NCBI GenBank assembly: GCA_964247055.1
Contig: OZ176050.1
Span: forward strand, 2,294,001-2,358,000
From: Paragordius varius
Taxonomy: Eukaryota; Animalia; Nematomorpha
DNA: 64,000 bases
Reading direction: 5' to 3'
Shown here: positions 34,976-57,100 of the stretch, piece after piece
Layout of the letters: every line of letters starts with the position of its first letter
Numbering within the stretch: position 1 is the first letter of the stretch
Notes under the pieces: model-generated
What the model was told of the DNA's origin: nothing
The model's input: the letters and a program-made list of their open reading frames with translations, nothing else
Database searches by the model: none
Translations under genes and position numbers: made by a program

Positions 34976-38624
<3,649 letters not shown>

Positions 38625-46800: not shown

Positions 46801-48899
46801 AATTGGTATATTTAAAATATTTATCGCGCAAGCACTTTTGCGTTTATTTTCAGAATAACCCATTTGAGACTTTGGGAGTCCTCATCTAAAATTTAAAAAC
46901 TTTAAAAATATTGTGCTTTTTATATGTAGTTTGTGATATATTTTAGTGATATTTTTTGTATAGAAGCATTTTTTCACCAAAAATTAATTTTAAAAAATGT
47001 GCGCAAATTTTGCCATTTTTTGATATGGAGGACCTACCACAAAAGATTTAATAACTTCATATGTAACTCACAAGAGCCCCAAAAGCACCATGTTAATCCT
47101 TTGACATTATCCTATCAGAATATATAGATATTTTATCAGGATGCTTTTGGTTGTGTACACTGTGTAATAGATTAAAGCGTTTTTCTACCGTTTCCAGCAT
47201 GCCTAAAAATAGTTGAAGTAAAAATATCCATTTTTCCGAAAAAATCATTTTTTGATGTCAAAATTTATCATATATTTAAAATTTATATCCCGCAATCTCG
47301 GCAATTTAACATTTATTTAAACACATCGATTATTGGGGTATCTATGACCCTAGACTATAAAGTAAATTAATTTTTAATAAACTACTGAAAGAAACGGCCC
47401 CTATTTAAATTTATGCTTCTATCCTATTAAAAATTATATAAATAAGCCAAAATACTCAAATTTATTTTTAAAAAAAGGTTTTATATCAAACTACTAACTC
47501 GTTTATTTAAAAACATTTTTTGCAAAGTATCGTGTTTAGTTCATTCTAAGGCTAAAATTATGTTTACTTTTTTATTAAAATCTTATTTACCATTTATATA
47601 ATAAAAAAGTGGTATATTTTGCATTATTATTTATATTAGGCTAATGCACACATGTCATGTTGACTAAATTACCTTGAAATTTATCCATTAAATAAGTTAT
47701 AACATTTTTTTATAGTTTTTATCATATTTTGATGCACCAATGTTATATAAGTGCTAACATTTGCGATAGTTTTAATTTATTCCATATATTTAGAAATATT
47801 TGATTTTAAATAGGCCTGGTCCGAAAGACCCCAATTTGAATTAAAAGTGTGAAATAAGGGCCAAAACCAAAAGCAATATGGTAATTCTGAAGCGTGTTTC
47901 TATCCAAATATAAAGCTGTATTGATATAAACATAAAAAGTGGTTTATTTTGCAACTTTCATGTAGCTTATGCACATATGCCATGTTGGCTAAATTATAAT
48001 TCGGGTTTATCCCTAAAATAAGTAATATCAAGTTTTTTAATTGATTCTTTTTTATATATCGGATCCATGTTATATTAGTGCAAACTTGGTTTCAATTTAT
48101 GCCATATTTTTTTGGAATTTTGATACACAGGCGGGTCATCGACGACCCCAATTTGAATCAAAGTACTGTAATGTGCTGTACTTAAGTGTTAATTATAATT
48201 ATCAATCGGAAAATTATCATGAATATTGTTATTTCCTTAACATATTATTGAAATTCATTATATATGGTATATGATTTCGATATAATCTTTTTGTTGTATT
48301 ATTTAATTAACATTTTTTACATTATTTATTTTCATTGGGTGGGAGGAAGGGTATTCCTTAATTTTTTTTATTTTCCTAAACTTTGATTTGTATCTAATTT
48401 TTTAATATTTATTTTAGACTTTTTTAACATTAGGACAAAAGTATCTTTAAATTTTGTAATGCGTCACCGTTCAAAATATCTGGTCACATTAATTTAGCCT
48501 TGCTATACAAGTTTTTTTTTCATTTTTACTAGAAAATAAAATTAAATCAAATTTATTTTTATCCCATTTTATTAATTCTTTGAACTACCCTTATTAAAAA
48601 GTCATAATCACATTCAAAATGAATCTGCTTGGGTTTTGTTATATATATGTATATTTTGTGATTATGGTCATTTGCTTAAATTATGGCTTTTAGATCATCT
48701 TATAGAATATTACTTCAGCCATTGGTTCCATACGCGACAAGTATGATTAAACCGGCAAATTAATTTTTGAAAAAAAATGTCAAAGTTTAAATGATTAACT
48801 GTGAAAAATTAGATATAAAATATGATTTGTTTAATGTGTACAAATCATGACCATCAAATTTAATGCTAATCCGAATAACTTTATACATAATTGTGTATG

Positions 48900-49440: not shown

Positions 49441-50137
49441 CAAAAATATTAACCAAAAACTTATAAAAAATGATGTAAATTAAATACTGCTTTTAAAGCT
49501 ATTTGAGTTAAAATTTAAATACTAAACATTGTTTTTCTACATTAGATAAAAAAACTTTTATTTTTACATTTTTTTGTTTTTAAAGTCTAAAATTGGGACA
49601 CAAAAAAAGATTTAACTAAACAGCTGATTTAAAAATTAATAATATTAAGTTTTTGCTGGTAAAATGCAACTTAATAAAGTTATTATTTACATACGCCTAT
49701 TTTTAAAAATTTGAAATAACGGTCGTGAAAAAGTTTGAGATGATGATTTTTTATAATACCTAAAAGGCTAAGAAAATATTTTTAAATTTAGCCTAATACC
49801 TTAAGATCAAAGTTTAAATCGCTCTAGGCTATAAAATGGAATGTTAAAAAGGGTGCACATGGCAAGATAGATGTATTTATTAATAGGAATAGCATGGGAA
49901 ACAGGTAAGTGGATGAAAATTTTAGATATCCAGGGGATCGTATTTGAAATAAGGAATTACCTACATAAGATGGTTTTATGCCGGGTGAAGAAAAGAACTA
50001 ATTTTAATTATAACAATATTAATGAAATACCAAACACCTACTTTTATAAATTTATGTACCAATTTATATTTAATTCAAACATCTTATCATATTATACATA
50101 TCCGGATAAAAACGTTAATTTTTGAAACATCTTCGAT

Positions 50138-53100
50138 ATGTTTTCGTATTTGCCTGATGATTATGACCATGAACCAGAAAGAGATGCCTCGCTCATCGTA
50201 AATTGCGATAAACCATTCAATGCCGAACCTTTATCCAAAGATTTAGTGAAAGATTATGTTACGCCTATTAGGAGCTTTTACAAAAGAAATCACGCTCCAA
50301 TTCCATACGTCGATTTGGATAAATTTAGGTAATTTTTGACTTTTATATTCAGGTTATTGGTTGACGGCTACGTAAAAACACCAAAATTGTATAGCATAAA
50401 CGATATAAAGAAATTTGAAAAATCCACCCAAATTTCTTTTTTAATGTGCGCAGGTAACCGTAGAAATGAAATGTCATCTTTTAAAAAAGTCAAAGTAAAT
50501 TTTATACATTAAACAGCAGGGTGTAGGATGGAATCAAGGTGCTTTAAGTAATTCACAATGGAGAGGAACGTTATTAAGGAATATTTTAAATGATGTAGGA
50601 GTGCAAGTTTTGACAATTTACATAGATTAGGATGCCGCCAAACATGTTCATTTTGAAGGATTGGATTTTCATTTGAGAAAAGAACCATACCTAAAAGAGA
50701 TGCATCATTACAATTCTCAAAACGATCCAAATTTTAAGCATTATGATATTAATGCTGAGGAACAATCTGTTACAACGTACATAAAAAGCATGTTAGATTT
50801 TCACTTGGATGGATATGGTTCATCAATTCCATTAGAAAAGACATTAAATGGTGGGCATGACGATGTTCTTTTATGCTGGGAGGTTAGTGCATTATAATTT
50901 TTTAATATTAAATAAATATGGTTTTACATAATATACATTGAATAATAATTCTTTATATGTTATACAACGATATTTTAGGATTTTATTTTGTTGGCCATTT
51001 TATTATCACAAGTTAAATTAATTTTTTAATATTTGAATAATAGGTAATACACGGTTAGTTTGAGCCAAAACAGCTAAAATAAAAACTATGTAGTAATGAA
51101 ATAAACATGACACTTTTTAGAATTTTTAAGTAAAATACTTGATACCACGTTAATAAAAATTATCCCAACGCCTAAATTTAATTATCTTTAATTTATACTT
51201 AGATGGACGGACAAGAGTTAACTCCTGAACACGGATATCCGTTAAGGATTATTGTTCCAAATTACATTGGAGCACGTAGTGTTAAATGGGTTTGGCGGAT
51301 AACTCTTTCCCCGTTTGAAAGTGACAATTTCTATCAACAACGCGATTATAAACTTTTACCACCGCATGTAACACAATATTACTTTATTTTTTTCGTAGTA
51401 AATTTTGAAGGCAAGTAAATTTATTTCCTTAATTAAAACAAAAAAGGTTGATTGGGGAAATGTGGATGAATATTGGGATAAATGCCCTGCCATTCAAGAA
51501 TTAATACCACAAAGTGCAATTTGCTCTATTCGAGAATGTTCAACTAACCAAGAATGCTATGATGAATTTAAAAATGTATGTATCTTACCATCTGACTTTG
51601 CTACAAAAGAGGATATAACGAAAGAAATTCATTTGATAATCAAAGGATATGCCCTAAGTTTTGATCAAAGGTATTTCTTAGTAGAATTTTTATAGCTAAA
51701 ATTCTAATTAATATGACATAAATAGAACCAACATATGTTTTTTTAACTTAGGGGTCTCATGCATGCGGGCCGCATGGGAATCCGCATACAAAAGAAAATG
51801 AAAATATGTATGTTTTGAGAAGTCTAATATTTTATTTTTATAATTATATAAAAATCAAAGGTTGTTATTCTAAAGCATTAATTTTCTAAGTTAGATTTTT
51901 AGTTATCTTATAAACACACTATTCTCCTTTTAGAGCGACAGAAAATTTGTAAAATTATAGGTTAGCACGTCCAAAAACTAAAAATTCAATAAGGATGCGG
52001 CTTTCCAATTAAGGAAATAGTTGGTATTCTAAATGGCAAAATAAATTTTAGTGATTGTACCGTAATTTCCAAACAGTCGTTACACTAATAAATAACTATT
52101 AAACCTCTTTAATTTTAAATTTAGCCCCTGAGGGCCTACCATCAAATCTTTAATAACACTAATCTTTTTTAAAATTGGAAATTATTTTACAACACAAGTC
52201 AATTAATACATTGGCTATCTATTTTATGGTTCAATATTGGTATTTTTAATAAAAATGCAAAAAATTAAATTGTCCATTATTTTGAAGCCTTTTTTATCAT
52301 CTGTAAATATTTTACTAATTTTATTAAATTCAGCGGGACACCTGGATAATATACCATTTACACCTATTAATTTCGAATTTACCCTAAATATACTTATGTG
52401 TTAAAATTCTTTATGTCAATATTTTTAGAATTTCATTATTGTTAAAGTTTCATCGTAGAAAACATTTTCATAGGTAAAAACACATTATTCTTAGGATAAA
52501 TTGTGCGAATGTGCAGCATTTGAAATGTTTGAGGGCTAATCCGAAGTATTTAAGGGTAAATTTGAGGTGAACCATTATAATTAACTACAAATTGGTCACT
52601 TAAATAATTATGTGCGCAAAAATTTAGTAATTTGCAAGTTTGGGTCAGTCTTGATGACGGTCACATTTGGATTAAACCGGAATGCGAACGGAAAGGAATG
52701 TCCGCTTGGGTTTTATGGACTTTGCAGGCTAGCTTAGAACTTAAACACAGCAATGATCATATACCCAAAAGCATTATGGTTAAATGTCAAAACATTGGTT
52801 TATTATTAATTTTATTATTGTTGGAAATAATAATTTAGTGATTTAAAGAAGAATCCATTGCATTTATTGTAGTAATCGCGTTTCAAAAATATAATTCAAA
52901 TTTTCTTGTTTTTTAATTTATAATATTCCAAATCTGTTGTTAAGCCATTTTCTCACATTCTACATTAAAATAATTGCCAATATCAAATACCATTTGACCA
53001 AAAATAATGGAACAAAAACCGTTTTTTCATTTAAAACAACAAAATATATGTATGGTAGATGAGAATGGTAATATAATTGCCACACAACCCAAAGATATGG

Positions 53101-53192
53101 AAAAAATTTGGAATTTACGCGGAGTTATGAATAATGTAATTCACACAGTGCCAATAAAGTTAGAGATTGGTGGTGCTATTGGGAAAAAATAA
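50138..53192 (+). CDS. SUOX: Sulfite oxidase (Mo and dimerisation domains), ~454 aa, apparently without cytochrome b5 domain
   Basis: Exons are 50138-50328, 50353-50494, 50520-50606, 50631-50882, 51203-51367, 51447-51670, 52628-52797 and 53059-53192, totalling 1365 nt. Motifs: PFNAEP, FYKRNH, CAGNRR (Mo-ligating Cys at 50447-49), HGYPLR..GARSVKW, QRDYK, IKGYA, IWNLRGV. Confidence 0.93.
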
Positions 53193-54107: not shown

Positions 54108-57100
54108 TCATTTTATTGATATATCCTAAAACATTTTTTATGCTTTTTAAAATATAATGAGAACAAAAATAGATTCATCGGTATAAATCAATACCTTATA
54201 TCGTATCATACATTGCAATTTATTTTTGGTGCCAACCAAGTCAGCAATCGTTTGCCAACGTTGGGGATCATCTAATTTCATGGTGCGGATGCCTTGTTCC
54301 AATAATTTTTGTTCTTCTTTCGACCATTTCGCATTCGTAGTATTAGTTTCATTTGTTTGAGTTGAGTCTATAGTTTAGGTATAAGTATTATTTTAATTTA
54401 AAACAAAATATTTATTTTTTAAAAATAAATAAATATAGGTAATTTTTAATCTTAAAGAAACACATATTTTATTTGAGAGTTAATTTGAATTGTTCAAGGG
54501 CGAATTTGATTTGTTTAAGTGGGAATTTGAATTCTTCAAAGATGAATTTGAAATGTAAATGTTATATATAATAAATCTGCATAACTCTCTATTTTCTTTC
54601 GCAACCCAAAACGATAAATTATACAAATGAACCAAGGTTTAAAAAATATAATTTTCTATAGCGCAAAAAAAATATTCATTTACGTTTTGTCTTTGTATTT
54701 TAAATTTTGTACAGTATTTTACCTTGTTGTGTTGAAGAAGTATTCACAATATTAGGAGATTCTTCGCTTACAACTGTTTGCGGTTTGACATGCGATGAAT
54801 TCAATTTCTGTTTTGTGGTTAGGCTAAGTGTTTTAACCCGTGCAATGATATCACGACTAGTTTTTGGTTTATCCCCTGAGAGTTGTCGTTTACAAACATA
54901 AGCTGTAATTTGCTCCCATCTATCATTTGTGCCTACTGGATATAATTCAGTAGCTTTAACTAAATGTTTCAATTCATCAAGCGTCCAATTACACGTTTTA
55001 AGGTTAGTTCCATTTTGAGGGATAGGGATTGAGTTATTAGTATTGGTTGTTTTTATATGTGACATTTTTTCACGATCCACATACTCTTGATATAGTTTGA
55101 GCTAAAAAGATGAAAAAGGATGAATAAAGTGTAAAGAAAGTTCCTTATTTAAAATCAGGGATGTGACACACAAATGGCGTCGTGGGTCGTATTTTTAACT
55201 CAAAAAACCCGGAGCTACGTTCGTATATATGGGTGAGTATAAATATTTTAATTTAGATTTCAAACGTAAAACTGTAAAATGCAATCACATATTATAACCA
55301 TTTTTCCTAGCTCAGTTGCCAATTAAATAGATTAATTCAGAAAATTTGTTTAAGGAATATAATTATATGATTTTGTCAGCATAATCTTGCAAATTAGGAT
55401 TTATAATTTTCGCAGGCCGCACGCAATGTCTCGAAGGGGCGCGTTTAGTCACCCCAGATTTAAATACGGCGTTTTTTAATAAAGATTAATAACCTGTTCA
55501 GTGAGTATGTTTTTGAGTTGCGTAAAATCATCCTTGTTTATTTCAAGTAAAGTATTAAGTGTTTTGAGATCAGTTAAATTTAACCAATGTAATAGTTTAT
55601 CCATTTCCTCGAGAAATAGGTAGTTTTCCTTAAATCCCATCATACCATATATGGACTCTTGAATGGAAGTGATAAATTGGTTAAATTTCTTTTTTTCCCT
55701 CTTATGTTCTTTGACAAGTTGGGCTTCTTTTGCTGACATTTCGTTAGCGGCGGCTTTTTTAATCTCATCCTCTTTAGTGGGCTAATCAATCAAAATATGG
55801 ATTAAAATAAAGATGAATTATCATAAATATAAAAACTAGTCTGCGATTACTATTGACGAAAGGGTTTCACATATCGTTTATAATTATCTTCAATTAATAT
55901 TTTATTTAAATTTCGATTATCATTATATCACGGATTTTACAACTGTTATTACAAAACATAATCAATCCGTCTACCATTACAATATCATAAATATATTATT
56001 TTCTTTAACACATAGATTATTATAAACAAATGAAGATTGGTTTAAACGTTTTAATACGCCTTTTATCGGGCTAAAGTTTAAAAAGGCGTAATGAAGAATA
56101 ATGTTATTTTTTAAAAATTATCATTTATTGATAAACGATAAAGATATATTTTCAGTAATTTTAATGAACTTCCTTAAGCGGAAAAGGTATCACCAAGTTA
56201 GGTAAACTTTTGTTCTTTTTCGATGTCGCTGTCATCTTTTATAGCTTCTATGGGTGGATATTGTTTGGATAAAGCATATGGAGGGCATATGTAATAATTA
56301 TTAAATTTTAAACTTCCTTTTAATCCTGAACATGATTTATGTAACCAATATTGACATTGGTGCATTGGATAGAGTTAAATCCCACATTTTTTAAGCATGC
56401 GCGGCATGGGTGTTTGAATATATCAGTTTTTTGTCATCTGTTATCAACCGTGAAGCTTAAGACATTTTTTCAACGTTTGAACTTTTGACTGAGATTACCC
56501 ATAAAAGCTATATCATACCTTAGAATAGGTGCAGTGATATTGAAAAAGTAGAAATGTTTACCTACCTTGGTGATACCATTTACGCTCAAGGAGGTTCATC
56601 TGAAGCCATCGAAAATCGCATAAAAATTGGTTGGGGTCGATACAACCAATATAAGCACATAATCACCAACAAACATATATCTTCAAAAAACAAAATATGC
56701 CTGATTGCGTTAGGCCTACTATAATAACATATGCCTGCGAAACATGGCAAATAATATAAAACACAGGAAAATATGCTGGATAATATGGAACACTGAATGA
56801 TAAATACCTTTTAATTGAACAATCTCTCATGATAAACAAATCCTACCAATCTCAAAATATATTATCCGTAGACTAGGCTACTACGGTCACATTCAAAGAT
56901 TAGATAACGATAATTGGATAAAAAATATTACAAACTTCAAACAAACAAAACAGAGTTAATCGTCCAACAATAACATGGGACAAAAACATTACCCAAGACC
57001 TACAGGCCAAAAACATAAAAGCCGGGGACTGGTTAAACAAAAAATCCTATGCAATGATCAAACACATAAGCCCCGTTACGACGGGATGCCAAGGGATCCC

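What the first reader, a model, noticed from the sequence alone, without database searches (positions are those of the whole stretch)
50138..53192. Animal sulfite oxidase apparently lacking heme domain and mitochondrial presequence (plant-like architecture)
Seen: the ATG at 50138 sits 12 nt after an in-frame TGA (50123-25) with no AG between them. The protein starts directly at DYDHEPERDASLIVNCDKPFNAEP, and I found no HPGG-type b5 exon upstream. The SO-specific Arg (KRNH), Tyr (RDYK) and Arg (WNLRG) are retained, so it is not a nitrate reductase. Known: animal SO has an N-terminal cytochrome b5 domain passing electrons to cytochrome c, while plant SO is heme-less, peroxisomal and reduces O2. 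There is no PTS1 here (ends GAIGKK). Inference: heme-domain loss, gene fission, or horizontal acquisition followed by intron gain, implying a different electron acceptor or compartment.
Basis: partly seen in the sequence, partly recalled or inferred. Interest (0 to 1): 0.7.

Follow-up and report, generated by a model that had tools for sequence, protein, structure and literature searches.

The report
Hairworm heme-less "plant-type" sulfite oxidase
This is an intact horsehair-worm gene for a sulfite oxidase with no heme domain, and it belongs to an old heme-less branch of the enzyme that several other animal phyla also keep, so it is an ordinary though little-noticed member of a known family.

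Summary
Window 50138-53192 (+) carries an intact 8-exon gene for a 454-aa protein made only of a molybdenum-cofactor (Moco) domain and a dimerisation domain. All sulfite-oxidase pocket residues are present. There is no b5 heme domain, no presequence and no PTS1, and nothing b5-like in the 64-kb window.

The proposed origins (recent heme-domain loss, gene fission, or horizontal transfer with intron gain) are not supported.
- The closest relative is a heme-less 488-aa protein of the hairworm Gordionus. It has the same N-terminus, the same seven intron positions and two shared lineage-specific inserts.
- In a careful ML tree, heme-less and b5-bearing sulfite oxidases form one split (100/99). The window protein sits in the heme-less clade with echinoderm, priapulid, placozoan and tardigrade proteins, plus amoebozoan and plant ones.
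- All seven introns match introns of the Trichoplax, crinoid and priapulid genes, six exactly and the seventh in phase only. This indicates vertical descent.

A b5-less eukaryotic SUOX family is already published (PMC6400420). This is therefore a new member of a known kind.

What is particular to hairworms is the two inserts and the missing peroxisomal tail. I found no RNA for this gene. I could not test whether a canonical SUOX exists elsewhere in the genome. Earlier notes of this scan had already called this genome a hairworm and noted its tiny introns.

The parts
50123..50125 (+). In-frame TGA stop 12 nt upstream of the start codon, with no AG between them
   Evidence: Read directly from the sequence
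50138..50328 (+). Exon 1 (aa 1-63 plus 2 nt): start codon, PFNAEP motif, KRNH motif (R50, H52)
   Evidence: The best PDB match is plant SO 1OGP, query 6-59 to chain 7-60, 57 bits, against 37 bits for chicken SO. Gordionus exon 1 also encodes aa 1-63.
50353..50494 (+). Exon 2: start of the Moco domain, with the Mo-ligand Cys96 (TGC at 50447-50449) and R101 in CAGNRR
   Evidence: PF00174, E 1.2e-08; alignment
50520..50606 (+). Exon 3: Moco domain, GVGW (W115)
   Evidence: PF00174, E 2.5e-05
50631..50882 (+). Exon 4: Moco domain, including hairworm-specific insert 1
50670..50813 (+). Insert 1 (about aa 154-201): roughly 42 extra residues after FEGLDF, shared only with Gordionus
   Evidence: Alignment. 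The matching stretch of the Gordionus model has low confidence, pLDDT below 50 at residues 159-182.
51203..51367 (+). Exon 5: end of the Moco domain, GARSVKW, RDYK (Y273)
   Evidence: PF00174, E 2.9e-16. All 6 variants seen here in DNA contigs are synonymous.
51447..51670 (+). Exon 6: start of the dimerisation domain, including insert 2
51528..51599 (+). Insert 2 (about aa 307-330): Cys-containing, roughly 20 extra residues after QSAICS, shared only with Gordionus
   Evidence: Alignment. It is modelled as beta strands in the Gordionus ortholog.
52628..52797 (+). Exon 7: dimerisation domain
53059..53192 (+). Exon 8: WNLRG (R431), C-terminus GAIGKK, TAA stop at 53190-53192, no PTS1
   Evidence: PF03404, E 6.3e-05; C-terminus comparison

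Best explanation
The gene is the horsehair-worm (Nematomorpha) ortholog of the ancient cytochrome-b5-less branch of eukaryotic sulfite oxidases, the branch whose studied member is plant peroxisomal sulfite oxidase. It was inherited vertically from early animals.

Shown: an intact 454-aa protein with a Moco-binding domain and a dimerisation domain, and with the Mo-ligand cysteine and the Arg/Arg/Arg/Tyr/Trp sulfite pocket.

Inferred: it forms a homodimer and oxidises sulfite to sulfate at the molybdenum centre. Having no heme domain, it cannot hand electrons to cytochrome c. It most likely passes them to O2, giving H2O2, as plant SO does, or to another small acceptor. With neither a presequence nor a PTS1, it probably works in the cytosol rather than in mitochondria or peroxisomes.

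Two hairworm-specific inserts have no known role. One is in a surface loop of the Moco domain and one is in the dimerisation domain.
For: Gene model and domains. Pocket residues invariant.

Exon 1 matches plant SO at the same N-terminal position.

The best full-length relative is heme-less Gordionus XP_065319909.1, 42.5% identity over q2-443. It shares two inserts and seven introns at the same places.

Heme-less proteins with only PF00174 and PF03404 occur in echinoderms, Priapulus, Trichoplax and tardigrades.

The careful tree separates heme-less from b5 at one split, 100/99. The window protein plus Gordionus pair at 100/99, inside the non-plant heme-less subclade at 98/97. The AU test against canonical SUOX gives p=0.004.

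Intron positions and phases are shared with Trichoplax, Antedon and Priapulus.

Of the exonic variants listed in the DNA contigs, 7 are synonymous and 4 are conservative.

The Gordionus ortholog models as an SO fold, TMt 0.90 to chicken SO and 0.87 to plant SO.

A spliced hairworm-type SO contig is present in an RNA-like run.

A b5-less eukaryotic SUOX cluster is published (PMC6400420).
Against: No transcript of this exact gene was found. The two small RNA-like runs hold none of it.

The branch is long (0.91), and the inserts could alter function.

Most members of the clade end in a PTS1-like tripeptide. This protein and Gordionus do not, so the compartment is unknown.

O2 as acceptor is carried over from plant SO (PMC10574614) and was not tested.

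The AU constraint also forced the canonical animal rows together, which adds to its cost.
Confidence: 0.78

Rival explanations
1. A canonical animal mitochondrial SUOX that recently lost or split off its b5 domain in this lineage.
For: The organism is an animal, and no b5 exon is found in 64 kb. A separate small cytochrome b5 gene is noted elsewhere in the genome (s1-257458), but such genes are universal.
Against: The 100/99 split puts the protein in the heme-less clade. The AU test gives p=0.004. The N-terminus aligns residue for residue with plant and other heme-less proteins. The intron set is that of the heme-less genes of other animals.
Confidence: 0.03
2. Horizontal acquisition from a plant, protist or bacterium, followed by intron gain.
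For: The architecture is plant-like and exon 1 is closest to plant SO in the PDB. Relations inside the non-plant heme-less subclade are unresolved.
Against: Six of seven introns coincide in aligned position and phase with those of Trichoplax, Antedon and Priapulus, and the seventh agrees in phase. The gene has host-type 24-25-nt introns and host GC content. The ortholog in Gordionus lies on a 54.6-Mb chromosome-scale record.
Confidence: 0.03
3. The true transcript starts further upstream, possibly outside the window, and splices a b5 exon onto this gene.
For: No RNA evidence exists for this gene's 5' end. Hairworm introns can exceed 20 kb.
Against: There is an in-frame stop 12 nt upstream with no acceptor in between. 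The only AGs inside exon 1 follow a purine-rich stretch. The start aligns with the starts of all heme-less homologues, including the RefSeq Gordionus model. The 5' end of the spliced X5 contig falls at about the equivalent of this ATG.
Confidence: 0.04
4. A diverged paralogue that is silent, or that has shifted to another substrate or role. Under this reading, the better-conserved SO-type transcript seen in run X5 would be the working copy.
For: This gene is absent from the RNA-like runs, while a different hairworm-type SO contig sits there at depth 44. That contig keeps AWHRV where the window has VIHTV. The branch is long and there are two inserts.
Against: The reading frame is intact across 8 exons and all pocket residues are kept. 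The listed variants show an excess of synonymous changes, 7 of 11. The inserts are shared with Gordionus, so they are old. The X5 contig may simply come from another species filed under the same label.
Confidence: 0.12

Closest known systems
Gordionus sp. m RMFG-2023 uncharacterized protein LOC135927681 (XP_065319909.1, 488 aa)
   Same: Heme-less architecture. The N-terminus starts at the same place, and exon 1 encodes aa 1-63 in both. There are seven introns at the same positions. Both hairworm-specific inserts are present. Neither protein has a PTS1. The locus GC content is about 27.5%.
   Different: Identity is only 42.5% overall, or 51% on conserved columns. Gordionus has two further low-confidence inserts. 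Its gene spans about 62-74 kb with introns up to 22 kb, against 3.06 kb here with 24-25-nt introns.
Plant peroxisomal sulfite oxidase (Arabidopsis At-SO, PDB 1OGP)
   Same: Moco and dimerisation domains only. The N-terminus is at the same position, and all pocket residues are kept. Both lie in the heme-less clade in the tree.
   Different: Plant SO ends in a PTS1 (SNL or SKL type) and is peroxisomal. Plants form a separate subclade (100/100). Plant SO lacks the two inserts. Its use of O2 as acceptor has been shown in plants and is only inferred here.
'Sulfite oxidase-like' heme-less proteins of other animals (Antedon, Lytechinus, Diadema, Apostichopus, Priapulus, Trichoplax, tardigrades)
   Same: Same domain architecture, the same 98/97 subclade and a shared intron set. 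All have the LMCAGNRR motif.
   Different: They are about 377-402 aa and have no inserts. The echinoderm, priapulid and placozoan proteins end in PTS1-like tripeptides (AKL, SKI, SKV, SKY, AKF, SRF). None appears to have been characterised in the papers I could search.
Vertebrate and insect mitochondrial SUOX (chicken 1SOX, Drosophila shopper)
   Same: Same catalytic fold and pocket. The modelled Gordionus ortholog matches the chicken Moco and dimerisation fragment at TMt 0.90.
   Different: The canonical enzyme has a presequence, a b5 heme domain and a tether, and reduces cytochrome c. It lies on the other side of the 100/99 split.

Membership tests
Sulfite oxidase family (Moco plus dimerisation fold) | Oxidored_molyb (PF00174) domain followed by Mo-co_dimer (PF03404) | tested here: met
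   Exons 2, 3 and 5 pass the PF00174 curated cut-off (exon 4 hits only weakly, 15.3 bits), and exon 8 passes the PF03404 cut-off. The full spliced protein aligns end to end with SO proteins.
Sulfite oxidase family (Moco plus dimerisation fold) | Mo-ligand cysteine and a sulfite pocket of three Arg, Tyr and Trp, which separates it from nitrate reductase | tested here: met
   C96, R50, R101, R431, Y273 and W115 are invariant in the alignment. The tree places the protein among SO proteins.
b5-less eukaryotic SUOX (plant-type) clade | No cytochrome b5 domain; protein starts a few residues before the D/E-Y-x-x-E-P-x-R motif | tested here: met
b5-less eukaryotic SUOX (plant-type) clade | Phylogenetic placement on the heme-less side of the split | tested here: met
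   100/99 support, 33 heme-less against 18 b5 rows
b5-less eukaryotic SUOX (plant-type) clade | C-terminal PTS1 and peroxisomal location | tested here: not met
   The protein ends in GKK and Gordionus in ISP, whereas most clade members end in S/A-K/R-L/I/V/F/Y. This feature describes the plant enzyme rather than defining the clade. Tardigrade members lack it too.
b5-less eukaryotic SUOX (plant-type) clade | O2 as electron acceptor; no cytochrome c activity | not testable with these tools
   Needs an enzyme assay. The plant data are cited from PMC10574614.
Canonical animal mitochondrial SUOX | N-terminal presequence plus a cytochrome b5 heme domain (HPGG) | tested here: not met
   The N-terminus is acidic, with an in-frame stop upstream. 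There is no b5 in the window.
Canonical animal mitochondrial SUOX | Groups with b5-bearing animal SUOX in a tree | tested here: not met
   (AU p=0.004)

The most novel reading that the evidence does not exclude
Hairworms are known for heavy gene loss. They may have lost the canonical mitochondrial SUOX and rely only on this heme-less enzyme, which has no PTS1 and carries two inserts. That would make them animals whose sulfite detoxification runs through a cytosolic, O2-linked (or new-partner-linked) plant-type oxidase instead of the cytochrome c route. The two hairworm-specific inserts could then be adaptations to a new partner or compartment.
Probability: 0.2. Interest if true: 0.55.

Novelty: new member of a known kind. 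Interest (0 to 1): 0.3.

Why it matters
Reviews of sulfite oxidase treat the heme-less form as the plant enzyme and the heme-bearing form as the animal enzyme (PMC10574614). This gene and its relatives show that animals inherited both forms and that several phyla still keep the heme-less one, often with a peroxisome-type tail.

None of these animal proteins appears to have been characterised. Their electron acceptor, compartment and role alongside mitochondrial SUOX are open questions, and ordinary enzymology could answer them.

For genome annotation, the locus is also a clean case of 24-25-nt introns that standard gene finders would miss.

Tried and rejected
- RNA evidence. The look-up of sequencing runs gave only DNA holders (X1-X3) and tiny RNA-like runs. 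Read laying found no contig of this gene in X4 or X5, so the splicing and the 5' end remain unconfirmed.
- Whole-protein searches. The spliced 454-aa protein has no reference, so I did not type it into any tool. Searches were run on exon pieces by reference, and the full model was compared offline with the fetched proteins.
- The look-up of encoding contigs for P0059 found nothing. The alternative Gordionus model P0151 gave the locus.
- Organism identification. A word search with the neighbouring 126-aa ORF (54703-55080, minus strand) found no candidates. The organism is instead inferred from the Gordionus sister relation and from the scan notes.
- Exon 6 alone has no PDB sequence match, because insert 2 interrupts it.
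- Canonical b5-SUOX. I could not test whether one exists elsewhere in this genome or in Gordionus. The protein searches list only the top hits and have no taxon filter, and only this window is readable.
- PTS2 and mitochondrial presequence were considered for the N-terminus and rejected by inspection, since the first 16 residues hold six acidic ones.

Full report
**Observation**

The ATG at 50138 follows an in-frame TGA at 50123-50125. The 12 bases between them hold no AG, so no acceptor can bring in an upstream coding exon there.

I built an eight-exon model with canonical GT..AG introns of 24, 25, 24, 320, 79, 957 and 261 nt. It gives a 1365-nt CDS and a 454-aa protein ending GAIGKK-TAA.
- Exons 2-5 hit Pfam Oxidored_molyb (exon 4 only below its cut-off), and exon 8 hits Mo-co_dimer.
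- The Mo-ligand Cys96 and the pocket residues R50, H52, R101, W115, Y273 and R431 are all present. They are invariant across a 14-protein alignment.
- Nothing b5-like exists in the 64-kb window. A regex finds one chance HPGG at 1107. An HMM built from 13 SUOX b5 domains scores at best E=0.61 on all six-frame segments. tblastn gives only noise.
- Only one SO copy lies in the window.

**Organism**

The window has 27.8% GC and tiny introns. The closest relative of the protein comes from the hairworm Gordionus, whose locus has 27.5% GC and whose genome has 26.9% (10.1101/2023.06.26.546503).

Earlier notes of this scan had independently called this genome a hairworm related to Gordionus. One rests on a nematomorph-type mitochondrial genome (s1-252886). 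The other rests on 22-33-nt introns (s1-310042).

**What the protein is**

Exon 1 alone matches plant SO (1OGP) better than chicken SO, 57 against 37 bits. It does so at the same N-terminal position, query 6-59 to chain 7-60.

A full-library phmmer search with exon 1, followed by an offline BLASTP of the spliced model, gave the best full-length relative. It is XP_065319909.1 of Gordionus sp. m RMFG-2023, 488 aa, heme-less, 42.5% identical over residues 2-443.

The two proteins start at the same place. They share two inserts found in no other sequence:
- about 42 residues after FEGLDF in the Moco domain;
- about 20 Cys-containing residues after QSAICS in the dimerisation domain.

The CAGNRR-to-WNLRG spacing is 332 aa here and 370 aa in Gordionus. 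It is 257-306 aa in every other protein examined.

The Gordionus gene also has eight exons, with exon 1 encoding residues 1-63. Its introns reach 22 kb where the window has 24 nt.

**The wider family**

A word search with the Gordionus protein found many heme-less proteins of 377-402 aa carrying only PF00174 and PF03404. They come from:
- echinoderms (Antedon, Diadema, Lytechinus, Apostichopus, Holothuria);
- Priapulus;
- Trichoplax;
- tardigrades (Hypsibius, Ramazzottius, Paramacrobiotus);
- Nuclearia, dictyostelids, other protists and plants.

These appeared beside the b5-bearing SUOX of arthropods, vertebrates, cnidarians, oomycetes and green algae.

I ran a careful IQ-TREE analysis on the shared domains (51 rows, 391 columns).
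- The 33 heme-less and 18 b5 rows fall on either side of one branch, with 100/99 support.
- The window protein pairs with Gordionus at 100/99.
- That pair sits in the non-plant heme-less subclade at 98/97.
- Forcing the hairworm pair together with canonical animal SUOX costs 56 log-likelihood units and is rejected, AU p=0.004. The constraint also forced the canonical animals together, which adds to the cost.

**Intron evidence**

I mapped exact splice junctions in the loci of Gordionus, Priapulus, Trichoplax, Antedon, Ananas and Hypsibius. The table gives alignment column and phase.

| Gene | Intron positions (column.phase) |
|---|---|
| Window | 85.2, 136.0, 166.0, 257.0, 312.0, 389.2, 500.1 |
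| Gordionus | 85.2, 136.0, 167.0, 257.0, 312.0, 388.2, 484.1 |
| Trichoplax | 85.2, 120.0, 136.0, 166.0, 244.2, 257.0, 281.2, 312.0, 389.2, 480.1 |

Antedon has the same ten introns as Trichoplax, within one alignment column at three of them. Priapulus has nine of them.

So six hairworm introns match placozoan, echinoderm and priapulid introns in position (within one alignment column) and in phase. The seventh matches in phase, inside a gappy stretch of the alignment.

The hairworm gene therefore keeps a subset of an ancestral animal intron set. This argues for vertical descent and against transfer followed by intron gain.

**Is the gene alive?**

The frame is intact and the catalytic residues are kept.

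DNA contigs from a second haplotype or a close relative (runs X1 and X3) cover the exons. Among the variant positions that read laying listed, 7 are synonymous and 4 are conservative replacements. All six in conserved exon 5 are synonymous. This is a partial list, but it points to purifying selection.

No RNA of this gene was found. The RNA-like runs filed under the same species label are tiny and hold none of it.

Run X5 does hold one 1365-nt contig at depth 44. It matches only two conserved stretches at about 85%. It is collinear with the spliced CDS, 1015 nt against 1030 nt between the two anchors. So it carries inserts of hairworm size. Its flanks translate to ...KFPIVTSNVT before the CAGNRR region and ...AWHRVTFTK-stop at the end. 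Its 5' end falls at about the equivalent of this ATG.

The contig is either the ortholog from another hairworm filed under the same name or a paralogue. It shows that this kind of SO is transcribed and spliced in hairworms. It gives no sign of a b5 extension, although a contig end is not a transcript end.

**Mechanism**

Shown: a Moco and dimerisation protein with a complete sulfite pocket.

An AlphaFold model of the Gordionus ortholog has mean pLDDT 81.9. It matches the chicken SO Moco and dimerisation fragment at TMt 0.90 and plant SO at 0.87. Insert 1 is modelled with low confidence. Insert 2 is modelled as extra beta strands.

Inferred from what is established for plant SO (PMC10574614): without a heme domain the enzyme cannot reduce cytochrome c, and it most likely passes electrons to O2.

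Most members of the heme-less clade end in PTS1-like tripeptides: SNL, SKL, AKL, SKI, SKV, SKY, AKF, SRF and ARL. The two hairworm proteins and the tardigrade proteins do not. So the ancestral location was probably the peroxisome, and the hairworm enzyme is probably cytosolic. This is inference only.

**Comparison with what is known, and novelty**

[quoted passage not shown] Public annotation already lists 'sulfite oxidase-like' heme-less proteins in several animals. The finding is therefore a new member of a known kind.

I found no paper that discusses or characterises the animal heme-less enzymes. The SO review treats the heme-less form as the plant one. So the family is under-noticed rather than unknown.

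Specific to hairworms are the two inserts, the missing PTS1 and the extreme compaction of this copy: 3.06 kb against about 62-74 kb for the ortholog.

**Limits**

- I could not search the rest of this genome or the Gordionus proteome for a canonical b5-SUOX, Moco-synthesis genes or peroxins.
- The spliced protein could not be handed to the search or folding tools because it has no reference. The structure evidence comes from the ortholog.

Noticed in passing
window 50329-50352, 50495-50519 and 50607-50630, against L001 10190-32258 and 32412-42946: Orthologous introns differ about a thousand-fold in length between the two hairworms. They are 24 and 25 nt here, against 22,072 and 10,538 nt in Gordionus. 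The whole gene is 3.06 kb here, against about 62-74 kb there depending on the model. All seven positions are conserved.
   Followed up: partly
window 47400-48040, 48400-48600 and 49600-49730: High-copy dispersed repeats lie upstream of the gene. In the DNA contigs of X1 and X3 the summed depth there is 10 to 1000 times that of the gene, with many alternative joints. This suggests a MITE-like transposon family.
   Followed up: no
proteins P0158, P0165, P0167, P0170, P0159, P0183, P0294 (not in the window): Heme-less 'sulfite oxidase-like' proteins of echinoderms, Priapulus and Trichoplax end in PTS1-like tripeptides (AKL, SRF, SKV, AKF, SKY, SKI). This suggests that a peroxisomal plant-type SO was present in early animals. 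I found no paper describing them.
   Followed up: partly
run X5 contig (1365 nt), touching window 50440-50475 and 53106-53136: A spliced, better-conserved hairworm-type SO transcript sits in an RNA-like run filed under the same species label. It is only about 85% identical at the two most conserved stretches. It is either a paralogue or a mislabelled sister species.
   Followed up: partly
proteins P0001, P0010, P0011, P0012, P0021: A further group of exon-sized ORFs starts directly at LDYSHEP...PFNAEP...FCR(S/N)HGP with no b5. They come from unidentified genomes. They may mark heme-less SO genes in yet other animal groups.
   Followed up: no
window 54703-55080 (minus strand): A 126-aa ORF that looks by eye like a SANT/Myb-type domain of a DnaJ-C-like protein. 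The word search found no candidate sharing three 5-residue words, which fits fast-evolving hairworm proteins.
   Followed up: partly
window 36507-36725 (+): An exon that looks by eye like a highly conserved G-protein beta subunit, which marks the contig as animal. I did not send it to any search.
   Followed up: no
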